Part shown: positions 42,461 to 52,546 of the stretch, in pieces
How the letters are laid out: each line of letters begins with the position of its first letter
Position numbering within the stretch: position 1 is the first letter of the stretch
Virus record (IMG/VR): IMGVR_UViG_3300017786_003484
Span: 62,001 to 126,000 of that record
Strand: one strand, 5' to 3'
Length of the DNA: 64,000 bases
Position numbers and translations under genes: made by a program
Notes under the pieces: generated by a model
What the model was told of the DNA's origin: nothing
The model's database searches: none
Seen by the model: only the letters and a program-made list of their open reading frames with translations

Positions 42461-43557
42461 AGAAAACCGTATTTAATAAAAATAAAGTAGATTATACAAA
42501 ACAACCGATGTTTTTTGGTGAAGAATTAAACTCTCAACGTTTTGATGAGTTCCGTTATCCTGTGTTTGATAAGTTAACACAAACACAACTTGGATATTTC
42601 TGGAGACCAGAAGAAGTTAGTTTACAAAAAGATAGAAGTGATTATCTAAACTTTACTGATTCTCAGAAGTTTATTTTTACAAGTAACTTAAAGTATCAAA
42701 CGTTACTCGATAGTGTTCAAGGTAGAGGTCCGGCGATTGCATTTGTACCTTATTGTTCGTTACCCGAGCTAGAAGCATGTATGATTACTTGGGATTTCTT
42801 TGAAACTATTCATAGCCGCAGTTATACTCATATTATTAAAAACATATATCCTGATCCTAGCGAGGTTTTTGATACTATTCTTGACGATGAAAAAATTGTT
42901 GCTAGAGCAGAAAGTGTAACAAAAGCATATGATGATTATATCAATGATGCACAATATTACTCAGCCACAGGTAAAGGTGATTTACGAGAAATTAAGAAAA
43001 AATTATATCTAGCAATGGTTAATGTTAACGCATTAGAAGGTTTGCGTTTTTATGTATCTTTTGCATGTACCTTTGCATTTGGTGAATTAAAAACAATGGA
43101 AGGTTCTGCTAAGATTGTTAGTTTAATTGCTAGAGACGAAAGTCAGCATTTAGCAGTTAGTACACATATTATTAAGAATTGGATGAAAGGTGATGATCCA
43201 GAAATGGTTTCTATTGCTAAAGAATGTCAAGATGAAATTGGACTCATTTATGATAAAGTAGTAGAGGAAGAAAAGGAATGGGCAGATTATTTGTTTACAA
43301 ATGGTTCTATTGTTGGACTAAACGAAAAACTATTACATATGTTCATTGAGCATACTGCAAACAAAAGACTTAAGAGTTTAGGATTACCAATTCGTTATAA
43401 CCAGAGTCCAAACGATAATCCGTTACCTTGGACACAACATTGGCTTTCAAACAAAGGAGTACAAAATGCTCCGCAAGAAACAGAAATTGAAAGTTATGTT
43501 ATTGGTGGAATTAAACAAGACGTAGACAAAGACACATTTACAGGATTTAAATTATAA
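42448..43557 (+). CDS. nrdB: Ribonucleotide reductase class Ia beta subunit
   Basis: FWRPEEVSL, QTLLDSVQGR, FETIHSRSY, LEGLRFYVSF, IARDESQH, PQETEIESY. Confidence 0.98.
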   Translation: MQHLKKTVFNKNKVDYTKQPMFFGEELNSQRFDEFRYPVFDKLTQTQLGYFWRPEEVSLQKDRSDYLNFTDSQKFIFTSNLKYQTLLDSVQGRGPAIAFVPYCSLPELEACMITWDFFETIHSRSYTHIIKNIYPDPSEVFDTILDDEKIVARAESVTKAYDDYINDAQYYSATGKGDLREIKKKLYLAMVNVNALEGLRFYVSFACTFAFGELKTMEGSAKIVSLIARDESQHLAVSTHIIKNWMKGDDPEMVSIAKECQDEIGLIYDKVVEEEKEWADYLFTNGSIVGLNEKLLHMFIEHTANKRLKSLGLPIRYNQSPNDNPLPWTQHWLSNKGVQNAPQETEIESYVIGGIKQDVDKDTFTGFKL

Positions 43558-43883
43558 TGTTAGTATCAACTAAAACAAGAAAAAAAGGAGATGTGATCTC
43601 TATAAAACTATCAAATGGCGAAGAGCTTATTTCTAGTTTTGTCGAAGAACAGGATACACATCTCCTTATTGATAGGCCAGTAGTTTTACAATCTGGTCCC
43701 AAAGGAACTCCAGCTTTGATGCCGTTCTTTATGACAGCATCACCTGATGCTACAAGAGACATACAGTTAAGCAAAACTCATATTGTTATGATTGCTGATA
43801 CTGATGCTCCTTTAGCCAAGCAGTATACCTCAGCAATGTCAGGAATTATACAAACAGGAGCCATTCCAGGGTTGCAAGTTTAA
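43557..43883 (+). CDS. Small hypothetical protein (possible Sm/SH3-like beta fold)
   Basis: GDVISIKLSNGEELI...LLIDRPVVL. Confidence 0.65.
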   Translation: MLVSTKTRKKGDVISIKLSNGEELISSFVEEQDTHLLIDRPVVLQSGPKGTPALMPFFMTASPDATRDIQLSKTHIVMIADTDAPLAKQYTSAMSGIIQTGAIPGLQV

Positions 43884-43894
43884 TAAATACTTGT

Positions 43895-44179
43895 ATGACT
43901 GAAGTTCACAGAGATACAGATTCTAGAATATGCGGAGCACAAACCGTTGTTGCTGGTAACTCAACTGTCTTTGCAAATAATTTACTGGTAAGTGTTGATG
44001 CAGATCCTAATTCACACGGCTCCGGCAGTATTATTGCAAGTACAAAAAATGTTTATGCTCATAACAAACTAATTGTTGAGAACGGTGATGCCGCTAACCC
44101 GGATTCATTATGCCCAATACCACCTCATTGTGGCCCAGACACTAGTTCAGGGTCTCCTAATGTATTTGTAGGAAGTTAG
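43895..44179 (+). CDS. PAAR-like baseplate spike tip, T4 gp5.4-like
   Basis: VHRDTD..CG, TVFANN, NVYAHN..IVENGD, H/C metal ligands, GSPNVFVG end. Confidence 0.85.
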   Translation: MTEVHRDTDSRICGAQTVVAGNSTVFANNLLVSVDADPNSHGSGSIIASTKNVYAHNKLIVENGDAANPDSLCPIPPHCGPDTSSGSPNVFVGS

Positions 44180-44180
44180 C

Positions 44181-46043
44181 ATGGTTAATATTCCAGTAAT
44201 CCCAGGAGTCAATGTTCAAACACAAGGAATACTCAATAAGTCTATTAAAGACATAATTTGTGCGATACTCTTTGGCGGTATTGGAAACCTTTTAAAAGGA
44301 AATATCATATGTATTGAAGCAAATATAAACGAGATGCTTGAAGATGCTGGATATGCTAACTTATATGATATAAAAGACGAATTAAGATTACTACAAGATG
44401 AAGTTAAAGCATTTAACGACCATTTAGGTATAAATGATATAACGCAAAGGATTAATGATGCGTTAGCAGAAGTAAGATATCTACTAAGTCTAGGAGGATT
44501 ATGTCCTGTTCCAATTAAGATACCAAATATTAACGGAGATATATTAGATCAAGTCACTGATAATGTTTTTAATAACTTACAAGGTGTATTAAGTGCATTT
44601 GGTCCATTGCTAAAACCTAAAATTTGTATTGATGCACAAGGAAGAATAAACACAGGATCTTTTGATCCAGGTAGTATACTTGATAATATCAGGAAAGCAT
44701 CACAAAATGCGTTAAATGCTGGAAGTGTAATACCATCAAGTATTACATCAGGCTTTAATAACCAAATAAGCGGTGTTACAAGCAGTATTAAACAGGCAAG
44801 GGCAATAGAACTATTTCCAGACTTTAGACACAAGCATAACTTATTAACAGGAGCACCTGTTGTTGCTGGACAACCAGCGATAACTATTGCCGCTAGACCA
44901 TCAGATGCTGATATTGCCGCAGTAGCTGGACTTTCGACTACAAGTGGCCCAGCATTTGAGGCCGCAGGAGCCTCTTATCCTCCTCAAGGAAATCCTAATT
45001 TAACAGATGCAACTAAGCAAGCACAACAGTTGGTTGCCAATGTTGCAAATAGTGCAAACTATCCTATTAATGCTGATAAAAATCTATGGGCAAGAGCATT
45101 GGGACCTGAAGTATATGCATTAGCATTAGATGCTTTAAACGGAGATGACCCATTTGTAGGTCAATCTCAAGATGTCTATGATTATTGTGGAAGAGTAGTT
45201 TCGCAAGAAACACAAACTATTACCGGAGATCCATTAGGTGCAGGATTGTCAGATACTACAGATGCAAATCTAACACCAACACCAATAAACTATAGTTTAC
45301 TATGGATTGATGCACCAGCACAAAGTAGGGTTGGTTGGGCAGTTAGTGGAATTACAGAAGAAGCATTAGTACCAGATGACTATGGTTGCGAAGTACTAAC
45401 ACCAGCACTAGCATTAAACCCTGAAATTGAGTTATTTCAAGGCAAATCTCATATACTAAGTCTGCCACCAAGTAACCCAAATGTTAATTCTTTGGAAATA
45501 AGCAATTTTGGCTATAAAGATAACGGTTTAAGTGCCGTACGGACCCAAATTTCCTACGAAATGCCAGTTGGACAGGAATTTTACATATACGAAGCCAAAT
45601 TAGACGGTTCAGGTAATAGAGTACCCGATATAACGAAGAGATGGACAAATGGACTGGTTCGTTTTGAATTTTCTGAATACTTAGATGAAGCAAATGGCAG
45701 AAACGAAGATCAAATTACTTGGGCTCAATCATTTATTCCGGATTTAATTCCAGATCCAAATGATACCAATAAGCAATTTGATTCTCAAGGACGATTGTTA
45801 AAGAGTACTTTGATTCAGGCACCGCTACCTCCTGAACCTGGAGAAGTTTGGACTGATAATGGATCAGTAGTATACGATAGTCCTACAGGTGGCAATCCAA
45901 TCTTAGTAAAAACTTGGAAACGAGCAGTAGCAAATCTTGTACTTGGCGAGAATATGCTTATTGAAGTAGACAGTACCTTCCCTGATTACCTAACCTACAG
46001 TAATGAGGCTGGTACCGTATTTGGGCTACTAAAAATAACGTAG
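44181..46043 (+). CDS. Large hypothetical protein, probably baseplate-associated
   Basis: 620 aa immediately after the PAAR gene; IICAILFGG, LGGLCP motifs. Confidence 0.55.
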   Translation: MVNIPVIPGVNVQTQGILNKSIKDIICAILFGGIGNLLKGNIICIEANINEMLEDAGYANLYDIKDELRLLQDEVKAFNDHLGINDITQRINDALAEVRYLLSLGGLCPVPIKIPNINGDILDQVTDNVFNNLQGVLSAFGPLLKPKICIDAQGRINTGSFDPGSILDNIRKASQNALNAGSVIPSSITSGFNNQISGVTSSIKQARAIELFPDFRHKHNLLTGAPVVAGQPAITIAARPSDADIAAVAGLSTTSGPAFEAAGASYPPQGNPNLTDATKQAQQLVANVANSANYPINADKNLWARALGPEVYALALDALNGDDPFVGQSQDVYDYCGRVVSQETQTITGDPLGAGLSDTTDANLTPTPINYSLLWIDAPAQSRVGWAVSGITEEALVPDDYGCEVLTPALALNPEIELFQGKSHILSLPPSNPNVNSLEISNFGYKDNGLSAVRTQISYEMPVGQEFYIYEAKLDGSGNRVPDITKRWTNGLVRFEFSEYLDEANGRNEDQITWAQSFIPDLIPDPNDTNKQFDSQGRLLKSTLIQAPLPPEPGEVWTDNGSVVYDSPTGGNPILVKTWKRAVANLVLGENMLIEVDSTFPDYLTYSNEAGTVFGLLKIT

Positions 46044-46044
46044 G

Positions 46045-46224
46045 ATGGAGATATTTTTGATATGTTTGGTATTGTTCTTGCTCATTGTAGCAATTATGAG
46101 TATAGGCCTCCTAAAAGGCCGTTCTGTAAGAGGAACATGTGGTGGTGCAGGTTACGTTTGCTCCATGTGTGGAGAGGTAAGTGTACTCCCTCAGAAGAAA
46201 AAGGTTGACATTACGGACCTTTAG
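46045..46224 (+). CDS. nqrM: NqrM/DUF539-like Na+-NQR maturation peptide (59 aa; not in ORF track)
   Basis: MEIFLICLVLFLLIVAIMSIGLLKGRSVRGTCGGAGYVCSMCGEVSVLPQKKKVDITDL: one TM helix, M.IG, G[ST]CGG, CxxC. Confidence 0.75.
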   Translation: MEIFLICLVLFLLIVAIMSIGLLKGRSVRGTCGGAGYVCSMCGEVSVLPQKKKVDITDL

Positions 46225-46233
46225 TGCTATGTT
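46205..46233 (+). promoter_or_regulatory. Early promoter of the AAAGGTTGAC family
   Basis: AAAAAGG-TTGACA-17 nt (TTACGGACC...)-TATGTT. Confidence 0.6.
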
Positions 46234-46269
46234 ATACATAATAGTGTAATATATGAAAGGATTTAAGTG

Positions 46270-46650
46270 ATGCATGTTAGTAAATTGTCTATTGTTGCGG
46301 CGTTGTCGCTCATAATGATGTTAATAACATTTAACATAGCAACGGCTCACGAATATTCATACAAGCATTATCATAATTCTCATGATAGTTGGGACGTTGA
46401 CAGGTATGATGATTATAGTTACTATCACAGTGATTATTATAAACGTTATAAAAGAAATGATCGCGAAAGAGAACATTGGGATTGGTATTATGACGATAAG
46501 AGTGGCCCAGAAAGAGAGGACACATATTACATGCCAACACCTTCTCCAATAATCGTGCAACCTGTTCCTCCTATAGGTTATGAAAGAGTTATTGCATATG
46601 ATAACTTATGTCATTGCAATATATACGTTCTTGTACCTATCAGACAATAA
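46270..46650 (+). CDS. Exported His/Tyr/Asp-rich low-complexity protein
   Basis: Signal peptide ending ATA-HE; HEYSYKHYHNSHDSWDVDRYDDYSYYHSDYY; C-terminal CHC. Confidence 0.6.
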   Translation: MHVSKLSIVAALSLIMMLITFNIATAHEYSYKHYHNSHDSWDVDRYDDYSYYHSDYYKRYKRNDREREHWDWYYDDKSGPEREDTYYMPTPSPIIVQPVPPIGYERVIAYDNLCHCNIYVLVPIRQ

Positions 46651-46758
46651 TCTTAAAACCCTACCTATTAGGTAAATATTGGTAATATTGCTTTTATAAA
46701 TCTGATCGATACAGATTTTAGAATATTATTGACCTAGAAGGAAAGGAGAATTATACAA

Positions 46759-47838
46759 ATGGAGCCAATTAAATTAAAGTGGCTAATAGCTCACGAGCCA
46801 CAATACCTATTTGTCCGCACGGCAAAAGCATTCCAAGAAGAATTAGAAAAAAGATGTCCAGGAGAGTTTGATATTGAAATCCTAGACATGAAAACTTACA
46901 TTCAAAAGTACGATGAAGTACCAGAATTACATCTTAAACCAGCATCTATAAAAAACTTAGAGAAAGACTGGGAAAATAGCAATAATATGGGCGGCGGAAT
47001 TTTTAAATCTGTGGCACAATCAGAGATAGGCAAGAAATGGAAAGCATATTTTTCTGCAATTAAGGATGGACGTATTGACATTAGTCAAACACAAATTACA
47101 GTTATAGGATCTTTCTTATATAAGCCTTTTCACTCTTTAGACCTTCCATTCCTATTCAAGGATCATGACCATGTAACCAGAGCATTAGACGGATGGATTG
47201 GTAAAAAACTTCGCGGCGAGCTGGAAGATAGAACTGGAGTTAAATCTTTAGGTTTTACTTACTCAGGCGGATTTAGAATTATCGGTTCTAACCATGATAT
47301 TGAAGGAGTATCTGACTTAAAAGATACAACTGTACAGACTGTTCCGACTACTACTGCAATGTTTAATAGTCCAGAAATTGGCAGTACTGCTATTCCTAGA
47401 AGGTCAATGGATATTCAAGAAGCTAAAGATTTTGCTAAAGATAGTAACTCGGCTGTTGAAACAACTTACCTAAGATTTAAAGGAACAAATATTTTAAAGA
47501 CAAACCATTCTATGTTCTTAACTAGTATTTTAGCAGGATCAAAATTATTTGACAAGCTAACACCAGAACAACAAGAAGCTTTCAAAGAATCTGCTTATGC
47601 AGTATCAAAGATTGAAAGAAAATGGTCACTTGAAGACTGTGAAAAGTATGAAAGAGAAGCAGAAGAGAAAGGAATTCAGATAAGAGATATTACTCAAGAA
47701 GAATCTGATTTTCTTGCTTCTAATGCTCGTGTTTCGTACGAAGATTATTTTTCAACTGATCATCAAAACGGTGGTAAAGTGCCAGACGAGCTTTATCATA
47801 AACGTAAACGTATTGTTGACGATATTAAAGCAATATAA
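46759..47838 (+). CDS. dctP: Divergent TRAP substrate-binding protein (DctP fold) without signal peptide
   Basis: GRIDI, LDLPFLFKDHDH, LGFTYSGGFR, KLTPEQQEAFKESA; SD AAGGAG before the ATG and no hydrophobic leader. Confidence 0.8.
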   Translation: MEPIKLKWLIAHEPQYLFVRTAKAFQEELEKRCPGEFDIEILDMKTYIQKYDEVPELHLKPASIKNLEKDWENSNNMGGGIFKSVAQSEIGKKWKAYFSAIKDGRIDISQTQITVIGSFLYKPFHSLDLPFLFKDHDHVTRALDGWIGKKLRGELEDRTGVKSLGFTYSGGFRIIGSNHDIEGVSDLKDTTVQTVPTTTAMFNSPEIGSTAIPRRSMDIQEAKDFAKDSNSAVETTYLRFKGTNILKTNHSMFLTSILAGSKLFDKLTPEQQEAFKESAYAVSKIERKWSLEDCEKYEREAEEKGIQIRDITQEESDFLASNARVSYEDYFSTDHQNGGKVPDELYHKRKRIVDDIKAI

Positions 47839-47845
47839 GTAACAA

Positions 47846-47897
47846 AATAGACTAGATAGGTAATTCAATTTTAAAACCCTATCTAGTCTATTCTTTT
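47846..47897 (+). terminator. Long hairpin terminator
   Basis: AATAGACTAGATAGG / CCTATCTAGTCTATT 15-bp stem followed by CTTTT. Confidence 0.65.
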
Positions 47898-47957
47898 GAT
47901 AAATAAAGTTAACATGTGTATAGCACATGTTATTAATTAAAAAGGTACAAATAAAAT

Positions 47958-48176
47958 ATGGCAATAGAACTAACAGGCAAAGTAAAATGGTTTCAAGACG
48001 CAAAAGGATGGGGTTTTATTAAACCTGACGATGGTTCCGATGATGTTTTTGCACACTATTCAGCAATTAATTCGGATGGCTTTAAATCATTAAAAGAAGG
48101 TCAAGCAGTAACATTTGAAGTAATTCAAGGTGCTAAAGGACGTCAAGCCGCCAATATCAATTTAATTGAATCTTAA
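47958..48176 (+). CDS. cspA: Cold-shock protein
   Basis: GKVKWF..KGWGFI (RNP1), DVFAHYSAI (RNP2), [20 protein letters not shown]. Confidence 0.97.
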
Positions 48177-48309
48177 GACTAACTCTCCATAAATTATAAC
48201 AATAGTAATCTTAAAGACTAAATAGATTATGGTAGTACATGTATAGGAACATAGAGTAACTATGCATATAACATCTGTTTACAGAAAATAGATAAGGCAT
48301 TAGAGATTC

Positions 48310-48807
48310 ATGAGTTTAACTGACTTCATCGACAGAAGTATAAGTCGATTTGCAAAATATTATTCTTGGTTTGCATTACTAATGGTATTGTTCGTTGTGA
48401 TCAATGTCTTGGGAAGATATTTCTTTGACATTCGCAATGATTATGCAGTTGATTCAACATGGCAATTATACGGTATGCTTATTATGTTTGGTTGCAGTTA
48501 TTCATTAGGAAAAGAAGCACATATTAGAACAGATCTGTTCTGGAACAATTATAAAGATCGTACAAAAGCAATTATTGACTTTGTAAGTTATCTCTTACTA
48601 TTCTTTCCTTCATTTGCACTTATCACATACATCAGTTTCAATGATACATCAGCCGCTATTGAGATGAACGAACGTAGTTCTGAAACAATGGCCCAGCTTA
48701 TTATATGGCCTATGAAGATTGGTATCACACTTGGTTTAGTACTTTTGATGGTACAAGCATTGAGTCAAATGATCAAATGTTATAGAAGGATTTTTATCAA
48801 TGAGTAA
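48310..48807 (+). CDS. dctQ: TRAP transporter small permease
   Basis: Four TM segments; VLGRYFF, WQLYG, HIRTDLF. Confidence 0.92.
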   Translation: MSLTDFIDRSISRFAKYYSWFALLMVLFVVINVLGRYFFDIRNDYAVDSTWQLYGMLIMFGCSYSLGKEAHIRTDLFWNNYKDRTKAIIDFVSYLLLFFPSFALITYISFNDTSAAIEMNERSSETMAQLIIWPMKIGITLGLVLLMVQALSQMIKCYRRIFINE

Positions 48808-50194
48808 TGAATGGTTAGCAATGACAATGTTATTTACAATGATTGCTGGCATATTTGTTGGAGTTCCAGTTAGTTTTACACTAACATTCTTAGCATTAAT
48901 TTTTGGATTAATGGGATTAGGATTAAGTGTGTTTGATCTCACATATCTCAACCTATTAGGAGGACTTTCAGATGAAGTGCTGATGAGTATTCCTATGTTT
49001 ATCCTTATGGGTTATGTTGCTGAACGAGCCGGACTGGTAGAGAATTTATTTGAGAGCTTAAAAAAGGTACTTGCAGGAGTTCCAGGCAACTTATACATTG
49101 TTGTTATCTGTATTGCAGTATTAATTAGTTTAGCAACAGGAGTAGTCGGAGCATCAGTAACACTATTGGGCATTATGGCCGCTCCAAGTATGATTAAGCA
49201 AGGATACGATCCTAAACTATCAGCAGGAGTAATAGCAGGAGGCGGATCTCTTATCATGATCCCTCCATCCATTCCCCTTATTGTAATGGCGCCTACAATG
49301 AATCTTAATATCATTGACGTATATGCGGCCGCAATAGGACCAGGATTAGCGATTGCATTTATGTATCTAGTATACGTTATATTCCTTATAAAAACAAAGC
49401 CAGAGGTAGCACCTATGATACCTGTGGAAGAAAGAGTAAAAGTAGATTTCAAGTTAATTCTGTTAACGTTATGGCATATTGTGCCATTAGCATCATTGAT
49501 TCTTATTACATTAGGATCAATGTTATTTGGACTAGCAACTAGCACAGAAGCTGGTGCCTTTGGTGCCTTTGGTGCTTTATGTTTAGCCGCTATTAACAGA
49601 AGATTAACTTTAACAAATATTCAAGAAGCATTATTAAAAACTACCAATACGTCGGCAGTGGTAATGTTATTAGCAATTACGTCAACAATATTTGGTGCCG
49701 TATTTGCTTCCTTGGGTGGTGACAAAATCATTGTATCAGTACTAACTTCAATGCCTATACCCGGATGGGCAATAGTTGGAGCGATATTAGTGTTATGTCA
49801 TATTTTAGGCTGGCCCTTTGAGTGGCCAGTGGTAGTGCTAGTGTTCTTACCAATTTTCTTACCAGTATTAATTGATACTGGTGTTGACTTAATTTGGTTT
49901 GCGGCCGCTTTGGGTGTTATTTTACAAACAGCATATTTAACACCTCCTGTAGCCTTAACCGGATACTACCTAAAACAGGTGGTGCCTTCGTGGGATCTTA
50001 AATTAATATTCAAAGCAATGATGCCCTTTATGTATATTCAGGTTGTTTGTGTTGTAATATTGTTTATTACACCTGGCCTTGCAACATGGTTACCTAATTA
50101 CCTAGCAGAGCAAAGAAAAAATATAGTACAAGAAGTACTAGATGAGGATGTCAAAGGACAGGAAGTCGACTTCCTAGGTGTCCTTGGACAATAA
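48800..50194 (+). CDS. dctM: TRAP transporter large permease
   Basis: GVPVSF, IPMFILMG, GVVGASV, MIPPSIPLIV, ATSTEAG, AYLTPPV..GYYLK, PGLATWLP. Confidence 0.95.
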   Translation: MSNEWLAMTMLFTMIAGIFVGVPVSFTLTFLALIFGLMGLGLSVFDLTYLNLLGGLSDEVLMSIPMFILMGYVAERAGLVENLFESLKKVLAGVPGNLYIVVICIAVLISLATGVVGASVTLLGIMAAPSMIKQGYDPKLSAGVIAGGGSLIMIPPSIPLIVMAPTMNLNIIDVYAAAIGPGLAIAFMYLVYVIFLIKTKPEVAPMIPVEERVKVDFKLILLTLWHIVPLASLILITLGSMLFGLATSTEAGAFGAFGALCLAAINRRLTLTNIQEALLKTTNTSAVVMLLAITSTIFGAVFASLGGDKIIVSVLTSMPIPGWAIVGAILVLCHILGWPFEWPVVVLVFLPIFLPVLIDTGVDLIWFAAALGVILQTAYLTPPVALTGYYLKQVVPSWDLKLIFKAMMPFMYIQVVCVVILFITPGLATWLPNYLAEQRKNIVQEVLDEDVKGQEVDFLGVLGQ

Positions 50195-50213
50195 TATTTT
50201 GGAGAATAAAAAT

Positions 50214-51308
50214 ATGAAACGTTTCATCGGAGCGATATCAGCTATCGCAATGTCATTTGGCGTAGTGGCTTCAGTAGCAACTGCAAATGCCAAAGAACTA
50301 CAGATTGCATCTAGTTTTGGAGCAATCTCAACTTTTAACGAGCAAGCAAACTTTCTTGCCGAAAGAGTTAAAGTATTAACTGACGGAAAAATTGATATGA
50401 AAATCAGACCTTCCGGCGCATTAGTTCCTTCTTTTAAGGTTCTAGATGCTACGGCGTCAGGTGCAGTAGATGGTGCATGGACTCAGTCTTATTACTGGGT
50501 AGGAAAGTCAAAGACTCTTGCATTGTTTAATAGTCCGTTGGGAGGACCTTACGGTATGGACGGGATTGATTTCCTAGGTTGGATGTTCCACGGTGGTGGA
50601 CTTGAATTGTATAACGATTTTTATCAGAATGAGTTAAAAATGGATGTACAGGCACTTCCAGCAATGCCTACTCAGAATCAGCCATTAGGTTGGTTTCATA
50701 GACCAATTAAAGATCTAGCAGATCTTAAAAACTTTAAATGTCGTCAAACTGGCGCCAACGTAGAACTTTATGCTCGTATGGGTATGCAGACTATTGGTAT
50801 GCCAGGTGGTGAGATTATGGCCGCGGCCCAAAAGGGTGTTATTAATTGTGCTGAATTCGTTGGTGGTTTAGAAGACGAACGTCTTGGATTTCCAACTGTA
50901 TGGAAATACTACTACTTGAATTCATTGCATGAGCATTCAAATACTGGTGATCTATTGATTAACGGTAAAGTGTGGCGTTCAATGACTAAGCAACAGCAGA
51001 CCGCTGTTCGTTCTGCCGCTTATGAGTCATATCTATGGTGGTTAACTGATATTCAAGCAAAAAATGGTCAAGCACTTGCTAGAATGATCAAAGAGCATGG
51101 CGTTAGAGTTATGAAGACTCCAGCAGATATTTTGGTTGCTGAGTTAGAAACTATTGACGAAATGTTAGCAGAAAATGCCGCAAAGGATCCTTATTTTGCA
51201 AAAGTACTTGCTTCTCAGAAAGCATGGGCAAAGAAAGTAGTTCCATTTAAGAACGTAGCATTTACGCCTTATAACTATGCCGCAGATTACTACTGGAAGA
51301 AAAAGTAG
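50214..51308 (+). CDS. dctP: TRAP substrate-binding protein, TakP-like subfamily, with signal peptide
   Basis: MKRFIGAISAIAMSFGVVASVATANA signal; GALVPSFKVLDA..GAVDG, YYWVGK, WMFHGGGLEL, GWF.RPI..L.DLK..KCR, AEFVG, LGF. Confidence 0.93.
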   Translation: MKRFIGAISAIAMSFGVVASVATANAKELQIASSFGAISTFNEQANFLAERVKVLTDGKIDMKIRPSGALVPSFKVLDATASGAVDGAWTQSYYWVGKSKTLALFNSPLGGPYGMDGIDFLGWMFHGGGLELYNDFYQNELKMDVQALPAMPTQNQPLGWFHRPIKDLADLKNFKCRQTGANVELYARMGMQTIGMPGGEIMAAAQKGVINCAEFVGGLEDERLGFPTVWKYYYLNSLHEHSNTGDLLINGKVWRSMTKQQQTAVRSAAYESYLWWLTDIQAKNGQALARMIKEHGVRVMKTPADILVAELETIDEMLAENAAKDPYFAKVLASQKAWAKKVVPFKNVAFTPYNYAADYYWKKK

Positions 51309-51328
51309 TTTTAAAAGCATATAACGTT

Positions 51329-51361
51329 AAAAATAGGGTGCTTTATGCATCCTATTTTTTT
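51329..51361 (+). terminator. Intrinsic terminator
   Basis: AAAAATAGGGTGC-TTTAT-GCATCCTATTTTTT. Confidence 0.8.
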
Positions 51362-51502
51362 GGCTATAACTTCTATATTTGTTATAAATGTATAAATACA
51401 CTTGGATAGATACGGTTTAATACCTTATCGGAAAAAGCCAGTTTTCTATCTCAATGTTACTTGAAGTAATATTGTTTTCTTAAGAAAAAAAAGGAGTCAA
51501 TT

Positions 51503-52441
51503 ATGACACAGAAAATTAGATGGGTTCTAGCACATGAGCCAATTGAATTATTTCTAAGAGCGGCAAAAGTTTTCGCATCAGAAGTTAATGCAAAAGCAGA
51601 AGGCGCACTAGATATTGAAGTTATGACAATGAATGAGTATTCTGCAAAGTATAATAACGGTGTTGTTGTTACTAAGCACGAACTTGTTGATATGATTAAC
51701 AGAGGCGACATTGAAATGTCCCAAACATACACAGTAGACATTGGCGAATATGATCACGAATTCCGTGCATTAGATATGCCATTCCTATTTGAGTCACACG
51801 ACCACGCAACTAAAGTGTTCGAAGGCCCAATTGGTCAGTCACTACTAGACGGATTAACAGAATCAGCTGGTGTTAAAGGTTTAGCCTTTACATACTCCGG
51901 TGGATATAGAATTATTCCTGGACAAGAAGGAATTGATACTATTGAAGATATTAGAGATCTTAAACTTCGTACTTCTTTCTCACCTGTTGCTATTGAAACA
52001 TTCAAAGCAGTTGGTGCAAACGTAGTTCCAATGGAACTAGAAGAAATGACAGATGCAATCCAAGATGCAGACATTCAAGTTGGTGAGTCTACTTACCCAC
52101 GTATCTATGCATTAGGACAAGACAGAGTTTCTAAGGTTATTAACCACACAGAACACTCATTGTTCTTAACAAGCATCTTAATCAACCAAGACTTCTTTGC
52201 AACTCTTGGTGAAGAACTACAAGGTATTGTTGTAGACGCCGCTAAAACAGCCGCTAATTACGAACGTGTAATCAGCATTGAAGACGTTGCACTTACACAA
52301 GCTAAAGCTGAAAGCGATGGCATTGAAGTTCGTAGAATGTCAACAGAAGAAAAAGCTCGTTTCAAAGCCGCTACTGCTCATGTTTATGACATGTTCCCAG
52401 AGTTAGCTGGAACAGTTAAGAAGATCCAAGATACAAAATAA
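51503..52441 (+). CDS. dctP: Second signal-less DctP-fold protein
   Basis: RGDIEM, LDMPFLFESHDH, AFTYSGGYR, DLKLRT, GANVVPM, NHTEH; SD AAGGAG directly before MTQKIRW; TATAAATA at 51391-51398. Confidence 0.88.
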   Translation: MTQKIRWVLAHEPIELFLRAAKVFASEVNAKAEGALDIEVMTMNEYSAKYNNGVVVTKHELVDMINRGDIEMSQTYTVDIGEYDHEFRALDMPFLFESHDHATKVFEGPIGQSLLDGLTESAGVKGLAFTYSGGYRIIPGQEGIDTIEDIRDLKLRTSFSPVAIETFKAVGANVVPMELEEMTDAIQDADIQVGESTYPRIYALGQDRVSKVINHTEHSLFLTSILINQDFFATLGEELQGIVVDAAKTAANYERVISIEDVALTQAKAESDGIEVRRMSTEEKARFKAATAHVYDMFPELAGTVKKIQDTK

Positions 52442-52462
52442 GATATCTTAGAACTACTATGG

Positions 52463-52490
52463 AAAAGGCGCTAATGGCGCCTTTTCTTTT
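52463..52490 (+). terminator. Intrinsic terminator
   Basis: AAAAGGCGC-TAATG-GCGCCTTTT-CTTTT. Confidence 0.8.
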
Positions 52491-52546
52491 GGGTAAATTA
52501 TCAACCAAAAAGGATTATAAGTAGAAGTAACAAAGAAGGAAATATT

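What the first reader, a model, noticed from the sequence alone, without database searches (positions are those of the whole stretch)
46045..46224. Hidden NqrM-like gene: a phage factor for maturing the host Na+-pumping NADH dehydrogenase
This 59-aa ORF falls below the track cutoff. It has the NqrM/DUF539 architecture: TM helix ending M.IG, then G[ST]CGG and CxxC. Bacterial NqrM is needed for assembly of the Fe site of Na+-NQR. TRAP transporters are often Na+-driven, so nqrM next to a phage TRAP system suggests the phage supports both the sodium gradient and the uptake that spends it. I am not aware of this as a described phage auxiliary gene.
Basis: partly seen in the sequence, partly recalled or inferred. 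Interest (0 to 1): 0.7.

Follow-up and report, generated by a model that had tools for sequence, protein, structure and literature searches.

The report
Phage-encoded NqrM-like respiratory maturation factor
A 59-residue gene in a marine jumbo phage is a real, conserved, divergent relative of bacterial NqrM, the small membrane protein needed to assemble the sodium-pumping NADH dehydrogenase, and no such phage gene appears in the papers searched; whether it really serves that enzyme in the unknown host is not shown.

Summary
The ORF at 46045-46224 (+) exists as described: one TM helix ending M-S-I-G, a basic flank, G-T-C-G-G, then C-x-x-C.

It is a real gene. It is under purifying selection and conserved in 27 IMG/VR viral contigs and thousands of metagenome proteins.

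Deeper tests still establish homology:
- Its nearest cellular relatives sit directly after nqrF or apbE in nqr operons.
- Profile-profile comparison with PF04400-positive proteins gives 98.6% probability.
- A profile of the phage family hits 61 of 401 Pseudomonadota genomes, all 61 among the 71 that carry nqrA.
- An HMM built only from bacterial NqrM picks this ORF alone out of the 244 kb phage record (E 3e-10).

The phage clade is distinct. It has three cytoplasmic Cys instead of four and an invariant Cys in the TM helix. Most relatives, but not this copy, carry a DUF1674/SDHAF4-like tail.

The TRAP linkage holds only in this phage's own lineage. The host is unknown, so whether it has Na+-NQR could not be tested.

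Verdict: NqrM homology is supported. NQR maturation is the most likely function, but it is inferred. This is a new variant of a known kind.

The parts
46045..46224 (+). nqrM-like gene, 59 aa, stop codon included
   Evidence: ORF. dN/dS 0.14-0.39 against orthologues. Bacterial-only NqrM HMM: 37.4 bits, E 3e-10, the only significant hit in the phage record. hhalign of its family against PF04400-positive proteins: 98.6%.
46051..46113 (+). single transmembrane helix (residues 3-23) with the conserved M-S-I-G end (46096-46107) and the phage-clade-invariant Cys7 (46063-46065)
   Evidence: Hydropathy. Conserved columns in A5 and A4.
46114..46131 (+). basic flank K-G-R-S-V-R; by the positive-inside rule it puts the Cys motif in the cytoplasm
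   Evidence: The topology is inferred.
46132..46146 (+). G-T-C-G-G motif, equivalent to the invariant GSCGG of NqrM
   Evidence: Invariant C and G columns in A1, A4 and A5. GTCGG also occurs in a bacterial operon-linked NqrM, L106.
46159..46170 (+). C-S-M-C (CxxC) motif
   Evidence: C39 nearly invariant and C42 invariant in the phage family. The same CxxC-G form is seen in the alphaproteobacterial NqrMs read here.
46171..46221 (+). short lysine-rich C-terminal tail ending V-D-I-T-D-L. It stands where most relatives have a longer tail ending GR[DE]VDF, and no fourth Cys is present.
   Evidence: Alignment A5. Pfam DUF1674 hits occur only in the 79-81 aa relatives.
44181..46043 (+). context: upstream 620-aa phage protein of unknown function, whose stop lies one base before the nqrM-like start
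   Evidence: Searches gave no family. The arrangement is syntenic in L011-L013.
46759..52441 (+). context: TRAP transporter cluster (DctP-like 46759-47838, CspA 47958-48176, DctQ 48310-48807, DctM 48800-50194, DctP 50178-51308, DctP 51503-52441)
   Evidence: Pfam. Linked to the nqrM-like gene only in this lineage.

Best explanation
The ORF is a functional phage gene for a divergent member of the NqrM family. The protein is a single-pass inner-membrane protein, N-terminus out, with a cytoplasmic G-T-C-G-G ... C-x-x-C thiol motif.

The most likely mechanism copies bacterial NqrM. In the infected cell it inserts next to the host's Na+-NQR subunits NqrD/NqrE and helps deliver the iron or [2Fe-2S] centre that lies between them. 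Newly made NQR complexes can then mature, and respiration-driven sodium motive force is kept up while the phage replicates.

What is shown and what is inferred:
- Shown: the gene is real, conserved and viral; it is homologous to NqrM; the motif with the essential Cys is kept.
- Inferred: the topology, metal handling, the target (host NQR), the benefit to the phage, and any coupling to the neighbouring TRAP uptake genes.
For: Real gene:
- dN/dS is 0.14-0.39 with all motif residues kept.
- It is found in 27 IMG/VR viral contigs and in thousands of metagenome proteins.
- Two runs labelled viral metagenome, filed under one sample, hold 98% of the sampled words of the region.
- Metatranscriptome contigs of two runs cover the 5' half of the ORF together with the end of the upstream gene.

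Homology:
- phmmer against 1.8 billion representatives finds P0010, P0013 and P0014 (E 1e-4 to 7e-4). Each lies directly after nqrF or apbE of a full nqr operon.
- hhalign of the phage family A5 against 17 PF04400-positive proteins (A4) gives 98.6% probability and E 5.9e-16 over 46 columns.
- Profile A5 hits 61 of 401 sampled Pseudomonadota genomes, with one significant hit in 60 of them. All 61 are among the 71 with NqrA. In most of the rows listed, the hit lies 6-7 kb from nqrA on the same contig.
- In L094 and L095 the hit is the gene after nqrF-apbE.
- An HMM built from 33 bacterial NqrMs only scores the ORF at 37.4 bits, E 3e-10. The next best of 3,219 open segments of the phage record has E 0.52.
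- The language-model feature search puts NqrM clusters first, with score 0.84-0.85 and 182-189 shared features.

Conserved features:
- The helix residues M-x-[IV]-G, the basic flank and the Cys of GSCGG are shared with bacterial NqrM.

Known function of the family:
- NqrM is needed for insertion of the intramembrane [2Fe-2S] of NQR (review PMC12174285; PMC6209661).
Against: - Pfam PF04400 does not detect the protein.
- The fourth conserved Cys of bacterial NqrM is missing, and the loop between the Cys is shorter.
- No nqr structural gene and no apbE is in the 244 kb phage record.
- The host is unknown, so it is not known whether it has NQR.
- NqrA was found in only 12 of 401 sampled Alphaproteobacteria. 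Yet the tree and the DUF1674 tails of relatives point weakly to an alphaproteobacterial gene pool.
- The one taxon label on a relative is a Candidatus Pelagibacter MAG. PMC11813361 reports only NDH-1, not Na+-NQR, for strain HTCC1062.
- The complex prediction with NqrD/NqrE gave no answer.
- There is no functional data.
Confidence: 0.5

Rival explanations
1. The protein is NqrM-derived but has a new role. The phage clade kept the membrane anchor and thiol motif but acts on a different host target. That target could be another membrane respiratory flavoprotein or Fe-S complex such as succinate dehydrogenase, or general iron handling, possibly in hosts without NQR.
For: - The phage clade is monophyletic and distinct (100/99).
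- It lacks the fourth Cys and has its own invariant Cys7 in the helix.
- Most relatives carry a C-terminal tail ending GR[DE]VDF. In the 79-81 aa forms this tail passes Pfam's DUF1674 cut-off (26.6 against 23.5 bits). By my own knowledge, DUF1674 is the SDHAF4 family, an assembly factor of the succinate dehydrogenase flavoprotein.
- DUF1674 was found in 134 of 201 sampled Alphaproteobacteria, while NqrA was found in only 12 of 401.
- A relative sits on a contig binned with Candidatus Pelagibacter, and PMC11813361 reports no Na+-NQR for strain HTCC1062.
- The neighbouring TRAP genes are of the DctPQM type. By my own knowledge, that type includes C4-dicarboxylate uptake systems.
Against: - The window's own copy has no DUF1674 tail.
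- In cells, the phage-family profile hit only genomes that carry nqrA.
- The Pelagibacter label comes from a phage-like contig in a MAG and is a weak host hint.
- There is no evidence of any alternative target.
Confidence: 0.25
2. The protein is a decoy or inhibitor. A truncated three-Cys mimic of NqrM competes with host NqrM at NqrD/NqrE, or binds its iron. This blocks assembly of new NQR as part of host takeover.
For: - The TM helix, the likely docking part, is conserved, while the metal-binding part is reduced: three Cys, a short loop and no fourth Cys.
- By my own knowledge, small phage proteins that mimic host factors are common.
Against: - By my recollection of Kostyrko et al. 2016, only the GSCGG Cys is essential in V. 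harveyi NqrM and the others only lower the yield. A three-Cys protein could therefore still work.
- Purifying selection keeps the CxxC pair.
- Already assembled NQR would not be affected within the short time of an infection.
Confidence: 0.12
3. The protein is an unrelated small Cys-rich membrane peptide, for example of the FeoB-associated Cys-rich membrane protein type (PF12669). It would resemble NqrM only by composition.
For: - Seven of 31 family members give weak PF12669 hits (best E 0.0077), and 19 give weak MauE hits.
- Short proteins dominated by a TM helix can give inflated profile scores.
Against: - The phage-family profile hits only genomes that carry nqrA, normally once per genome and next to the nqr operon.
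- The three cellular relatives whose context I checked (P0010, P0013, P0014) are all in nqr operons.
- The window protein itself gives no PF12669 hit.
- No feoB lies among the genes scanned from 43557 to 52441.
Confidence: 0.03

Closest known systems
NqrM (DUF539, Pfam PF04400) of Vibrio harveyi, V. cholerae and Klebsiella pneumoniae
   Same: Both are about 60-85 aa with one N-terminal TM helix. They share conserved helix residues (M-x-[IV]-G), a basic flank, the G[ST]CGG motif and further Cys a few residues on. Homology is supported by profile tests.
   Different: - The phage protein is encoded by a phage, with no nqr or apbE genes nearby.
- It falls below the Pfam cut-off.
- It has three rather than four cytoplasmic Cys (CxxC instead of CxC...C or CxxCGG...C).
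- It has a short loop and an invariant Cys in the TM helix.
- It lacks the C-terminal FYDA-like end seen in many bacterial NqrMs.
NqrM of the nqr-bearing Alphaproteobacteria sampled here, and the metagenomic protein P0014
   Same: They share the CxxC-G form of the second Cys pair. In the tree P0014 is sister to the phage clade (90/90), and the alphaproteobacterial sequences group with them weakly (80/60). P0014 sits after nqrF-apbE.
   Different: The cellular proteins keep a distal fourth Cys and lie in or next to nqr operons. The tree rests on about 65 columns and is weakly resolved.
DUF1674 / SDHAF4 family (Pfam PF07896)
   Same: Many relatives of the window's protein in other jumbo-phage contigs end in a tail that matches this family. 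The 79-81 aa forms pass the cut-off; the 91-95 aa forms align to them.
   Different: The window's 59-aa copy has no such tail. A fusion of an NqrM-like anchor with DUF1674 was seen here only in phage contigs, and only three matches to bacterial genomes ran on toward the tail positions, two of them across stop codons.
FeoB-associated Cys-rich membrane protein (Pfam PF12669)
   Same: It has the same general build: a short protein with one TM helix followed by clustered Cys.
   Different: The window protein gives no hit. The family profile tracks nqr, not feoB.
Auxiliary metabolic genes of marine phages that support host energy metabolism (own knowledge: psbA, PTOX and plastocyanin in cyanophages)
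   Same: The gene is a host-derived gene carried by a marine phage that plausibly keeps host energy supply going during infection.
   Different: It is an assembly factor of a respiratory sodium pump, not a catalytic or electron-carrier protein. No such phage gene was found in the literature searched or in 50,697 GenBank phage records.

Membership tests
NqrM (DUF539, PF04400) | Match to the Pfam PF04400 model at or above its gathering score (22 bits) | tested here: not met
   There is no hit at E <= 10 for the window protein or in the six-frame search of the record. Relatives reach 10.8-18.2 bits. The model has only 43 positions and starts just before GSCGG, so it leaves out the conserved TM helix.
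NqrM (DUF539, PF04400) | Full-length sequence homology to proteins that are NqrM by Pfam score or by operon position | tested here: met
   hhalign 98.6%, E 5.9e-16. A bacterial-only HMM scores 37.4 bits, E 3e-10, the single significant hit in the record. phmmer hits to operon-linked P0010, P0013 and P0014.
NqrM (DUF539, PF04400) | Single N-terminal transmembrane helix followed by a basic stretch | tested here: met
   Residues 3-23, mean hydropathy 3.2, then K24, R26 and R29. The helix residues are conserved with bacterial NqrM.
NqrM (DUF539, PF04400) | Cys of the GSCGG motif. My recollection of Kostyrko et al. 2016, a paper the library does not hold, is that this is Cys33 of V. harveyi NqrM and the only Cys whose loss abolishes function. 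| tested here: met
   C32 in G-T-C-G-G. The column is invariant in A1, A4 and A5.
NqrM (DUF539, PF04400) | Four conserved cytoplasmic Cys | tested here: not met
   Only C32, C39 and C42 are present, and no Cys follows the CxxC. The same holds across the phage clade, whereas bacterial members have a further conserved Cys.
NqrM (DUF539, PF04400) | Gene lies in or next to the nqrA-F / apbE locus | tested here: not met
   No ApbE and no NqrD/E family match in the 244 kb phage record. This is expected for a phage-borne copy.
NqrM (DUF539, PF04400) | Occurs only where Na+-NQR is present (here: the host encodes nqrA-F) | not testable with these tools
   The host is unknown. In cells, all 61 genomes hit by the phage-family profile carry NqrA. 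Attempts to infer the host failed.
NqrM (DUF539, PF04400) | Required for maturation of Na+-NQR | not testable with these tools
   This needs complementation or co-expression assays. The complex prediction with NqrD/NqrE gave no answer.
FeoB-associated Cys-rich membrane protein (PF12669) | Match to the family model and linkage to feoB | tested here: not met
   No hit for the window protein. Weak sub-threshold hits in 7 of 31 relatives. No feoB among the genes scanned from 43557 to 52441.
DUF1674 / SDHAF4 (PF07896) | C-terminal DUF1674 motif | tested here: not met
   Absent from the window's 59-aa protein. Present in the 79-81 aa relatives.

The most novel reading that the evidence does not exclude
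Marine jumbo phages carry their own clade of NqrM-derived, membrane-anchored thiol proteins. Many of these are fused to an SDHAF4-like (DUF1674) tail. The clade would remodel the assembly of host respiratory complexes (Na+-NQR, succinate dehydrogenase, or both) in marine Alphaproteobacteria, possibly including hosts that have no NQR at all. The window's short form would be the minimal version of this virus-specific assembly factor.
Probability: 0.2. Interest if true: 0.75.

Novelty: new variant of a known kind. Interest (0 to 1): 0.55.

Why it matters
Phage auxiliary genes are known for photosynthesis, nucleotide and nutrient metabolism. An assembly factor for a respiratory sodium pump would be a new class of such genes. 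It would suggest that keeping the host's sodium motive force alive is worth a gene to large marine phages.

The family is abundant in seawater metagenomes and viromes, so any effect would be ecologically widespread.

The result also shows that Pfam's NqrM model misses a whole viral clade.

The phage clade offers natural variants that could help to work out how the poorly understood NqrM handles iron. These include three-Cys forms, short forms, and forms fused to an SDHAF4-like tail.

Tried and rejected
- **Family scans of the 59-aa protein.** Pfam, NCBIfam and PHROGs gave only weak, irrelevant hits.
- **GenBank phages.** A megablast of 44000-52500 and tblastn of the ORF and of a 91-aa relative against 50,697 records found no homologue. 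Only chance Aeromonas matches at E 3-9 appeared.
- **Species genomes.** A pattern scan of 185,579 genomes with phage-clade peptide patterns found no relative. An earlier attempt failed because the alignment had no conserved stretch.
- **Host inference.**
  - DctM has at best 48% identity to freshwater Burkholderiales MAGs and 40-50% to Bradyrhizobium and similar genomes, which is not informative.
  - The five nqr-bearing alphaproteobacterial genomes tested have no close DctM (31% over the full length, 42% on one fragment).
  - No psbA is present, so this is not a typical cyanophage, although NrdA is 70% identical to cyanophage NrdA.
  - TerL and DNA polymerase place the phage and its nqrM-carrying relatives near the PA5oct, Atu_ph07 and Phosso jumbo phages at about 48-50% identity, which does not name a host.
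  - The 'Candidatus Pelagibacter' label of relative P0057 sits on a phage-like contig.
- **Complex prediction** of the phage protein with NqrD and NqrE of L008 gave no answer: score 0.01, partner pLDDT about 45.
- **Neighbour functions.** Atlas searches for the neighbours p620 and p127 gave only weak leads.
- **Primary literature.** The primary NqrM papers (PMC4751810, PMC6964743) are not held. What I say about the essential Cys is from memory.
- **Rejected readings.** I rejected a chance ORF and a second copy or a remnant of a longer form elsewhere in the record.

Full report
**Observation**

The ORF 46045-46224 on the + strand is real: ATG to TAG, 59 codons. It starts one base after the TAG of the upstream 620-aa gene.

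The product has these features:
- An acidic N-terminus (E2).
- A strongly hydrophobic helix at residues 3-23 that ends M-S-I-G.
- A basic flank (K24, R26, R29).
- G-T-C-G-G at residues 30-34.
- C-S-M-C at residues 39-42.
- A short lysine-rich tail.

By the positive-inside rule, the Cys motif faces the cytoplasm. This topology is an inference.

The combined motif occurs once in the six frames of the entire 244,432-base phage record and never in 30 shuffles.

**Is it a gene?**

Yes.
- Three diverged orthologues in syntenic phage contigs (L011, L012, L013) keep the frame and all motif residues.
- Pairwise dN/dS is 0.14-0.39. That is weaker constraint than on the neighbours (0.05-0.14) but clearly purifying, and the changes are mostly conservative and lie mainly in the helix.
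- The region is held nearly letter for letter by at least 14 marine DNA runs, from 13 samples and 13 studies. Two of these runs, from one sample, are labelled viral metagenome.
- Contigs from two metatranscriptome runs cover the 5' half of the ORF, joined to the end of the upstream gene. This shows presence in RNA libraries, not proof of transcription.

**What the standard check says**

Pfam, NCBIfam and PHROGs give nothing meaningful for the 59-aa protein. PF04400 (NqrM) is not reported even at E <= 10. A six-frame search of the record with PF04400 is also negative.

**Why I still call it an NqrM homologue**

1. A language-model feature search puts NqrM clusters first, with score 0.84-0.85 and 182-189 shared features. 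This is a lead only.
2. An exhaustive phmmer search of 1.8 billion representatives finds 10 proteins. I looked up the context of three cellular ones:
   - P0013 lies directly after nqrABCDEF-apbE.
   - P0010 lies directly after nqrF.
   - P0014 lies after nqrF-apbE.
   
   These proteins themselves mostly miss Pfam's cut-off, so the model is simply insensitive.
3. A profile of 31 phage-family proteins (A5) was compared with 17 proteins that carry a precomputed PF04400 hit (A4). The result is 98.6% probability and E 5.9e-16 over 46 columns.
4. The phage-only profile A5 hits 61 of 401 evenly sampled Pseudomonadota genomes, with one significant hit in 60 of them.
   - All 61 are among the 71 genomes that carry NqrA.
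   - In most of the rows listed, the two genes lie 6-7 kb apart on one contig.
   - In the two Oceanospirillales genomes read in detail, the hit is the gene after nqrF-apbE.
5. The reverse test used an HMM built only from 33 bacterial NqrMs, TM helix included. It scores the window ORF at 37.4 bits, E 3e-10. The next best of 3,219 open segments in the phage record has E 0.52.

Pfam's model has 43 positions and begins just before GSCGG. It therefore ignores the conserved helix and covers exactly the part where the phage clade has diverged.

**How the phage clade differs**

Bacterial NqrMs have GSCGG, a loop, a Cys pair (CxC or CxxC) and one further conserved Cys. Many end in an FYDA-like motif.

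The phage clade has:
- G[ST]CGG, a four-residue loop and CxxC-G, with no further Cys.
- An invariant Cys at position 7 in the helix, where the bacterial proteins usually have Thr.

In a tree of about 65 columns the phage clade is monophyletic (100/99) and sister to P0014 (90/90). It groups weakly (80/60) with NqrMs of nqr-bearing Alphaproteobacteria, which share the CxxC-G form. With so few columns this is a hint, not a result.

**The wider family**

The profile search returns 4,094 hits. The best are 91-95 aa proteins, with some of 79-81 aa and some of 53-60 aa.

The contexts I read (L001-L007, L139-L141) are phage-like. They carry a family B DNA polymerase about 50% identical to that of Sinorhizobium phage Phosso and 46% identical to that of Agrobacterium phage Atu_ph07, together with GTP cyclohydrolase I, PTPS and Bmp genes.

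The window's own terminase is 49% identical to Pseudomonas phage PA5oct and 48% to Phosso. So the gene is spread through a group of marine jumbo myophages.

It was not found in 50,697 GenBank phage records. A pattern scan of 185,579 species genomes with two phage-clade peptide patterns also found no relative.

The longer forms end in GR[DE]VDF. The 79-81 aa forms pass Pfam's DUF1674 cut-off. By my own knowledge, DUF1674 is the SDHAF4 family. DUF1674 was found in 134 of 201 sampled Alphaproteobacteria and, among 14 control genomes, only in Caulobacter. The window's copy has no such tail.

**The TRAP link**

The window does carry DctP-like, DctQ, DctM and two further DctP genes just downstream. 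The same order is kept in its close relatives. In about 25 other viral loci that carry the gene, no homologue of these TRAP proteins lies within 6-8 kb. The linkage is therefore a feature of one lineage, not of the family.

**The host**

I could not identify it.
- There is no psbA.
- DctM has no close cellular relative among those found.
- The nqr-bearing alphaproteobacterial genomes tested hold no close DctM.
- NqrA was found in only 12 of 401 sampled Alphaproteobacteria. These include a 1.2 Mb genome whose nqrM locus has 32% G+C, so low-GC streamlined alphaproteobacteria with NQR do exist.
- The phage has 35.6% G+C.
- The only taxon label on a relative, Candidatus Pelagibacter, comes from a phage-like contig in a MAG.
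- PMC11813361 states that strains HTCC1062 and IMCC1322 have only NDH-1 and no Na+-NQR.

Whether the host has an NQR to mature is thus the main open point.

**Mechanism**

NqrM is reported to be needed for insertion of the intramembrane [2Fe-2S] between NqrD and NqrE (PMC12174285; PMC6209661). By my recollection of Kostyrko et al. 2016, which the library does not hold, only the Cys of GSCGG is essential.

The phage protein keeps that Cys, the conserved helix residues and the CxxC pair. The most economical reading is that it works like NqrM on the host's NQR. I put this at about 0.5.

The rivals are:
- A new target for the protein, about 0.25. This is suggested by the SDHAF4-like tails of relatives and the rarity of NQR in Alphaproteobacteria.
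- A decoy that blocks NQR assembly, about 0.12.
- A chance resemblance, about 0.03.

A complex prediction with NqrD/NqrE gave no answer and counts neither way.

**Novelty**

No paper in the searched library links NqrM or DUF539 with phages or auxiliary metabolic genes.

I file the ORF as a divergent member of the NqrM family by homology. Two defining features were tested and not met: the Pfam cut-off and the four Cys. One could not be tested: presence of NQR in the host. It is a new variant of a known kind.

Noticed in passing
L004:8001-8240, L005:5730-5969, L006:466-705; proteins P0006, P0016, P0017, P0027: Relatives of 79-81 aa in other jumbo-phage contigs fuse the NqrM-like helix and Cys motif to a C-terminal DUF1674 (SDHAF4-like) motif. 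These pass Pfam's cut-off. The 91-95 aa forms have a longer tail that also ends GR[DE]VDF. Only three matches to bacterial genomes ran on toward the tail positions, two of them across stop codons.
   Followed up: partly
window 46267-46650 (+): The next gene encodes a 127-aa protein with an N-terminal signal-like helix and a region very rich in His, Tyr and Asp. It is conserved in the sister contigs (87% and 49% identity). The Atlas gives only weak leads: membrane lipoprotein, and RcnB family at rank 55. It may be a periplasmic metal-binding protein.
   Followed up: partly
window 46759-47838 and 51503-52441 (+), compared with 50178-51308: Two of the three DctP-like solute-binding proteins start directly with the mature domain and have no signal peptide. 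The 376-aa one has a typical signal peptide. Binding proteins without an export signal are odd for a TRAP system.
   Followed up: no
window 47958-48176 (+): A cold-shock-domain (CspA-like) gene sits inside the TRAP cluster, between the first DctP-like gene and DctQ. It is conserved there in the sister contigs.
   Followed up: no
L094, L095, L097, L100, L101, L104, L106, L107 (bacterial nqrM genes); A4 rows P0165, P0208, P0220, P0235: Many bacterial NqrMs end in a conserved aromatic-acidic motif (FYDA, FYEV, GYDA, TYDA or TEHx[IV]xF). It lies outside Pfam's 43-position model, and I am not aware of any description of it.
   Followed up: no
P0057 (WP_271628450.1); L139:7649-7924: A RefSeq protein labelled Candidatus Pelagibacter bacterium lies on a contig with the same phage gene order as L001 (the L139 fragment starts just downstream of where L001 has the DNA polymerase). 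This is probably a phage contig binned into a SAR11 MAG.
   Followed up: partly
L007 (contig of 539,231 bases): One carrier of the phage-type gene, with the same phage neighbourhood, is a 539 kb contig. It is either a very large phage genome or a misassembly.
   Followed up: no
contigs carrying P0014: In the cellular relative nearest to the phage clade, the nqr operon is interrupted by a transposase-like gene between nqrE and nqrF, and the region downstream is full of IS elements.
   Followed up: no
P0009 (607 aa): A 607-aa protein matched residues 22-45 of the query in eight separate stretches. This suggests a protein built of repeated GSCGG-CxxC-like units.
   Followed up: no
window 43895-44179 (+): A weak PAAR-motif protein (20.2 bits, below the cut-off) lies two genes upstream, right after nrdA and nrdB. 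The nqrM-like gene therefore sits at a junction of nucleotide-metabolism, possible tail-spike and transporter genes.
   Followed up: no
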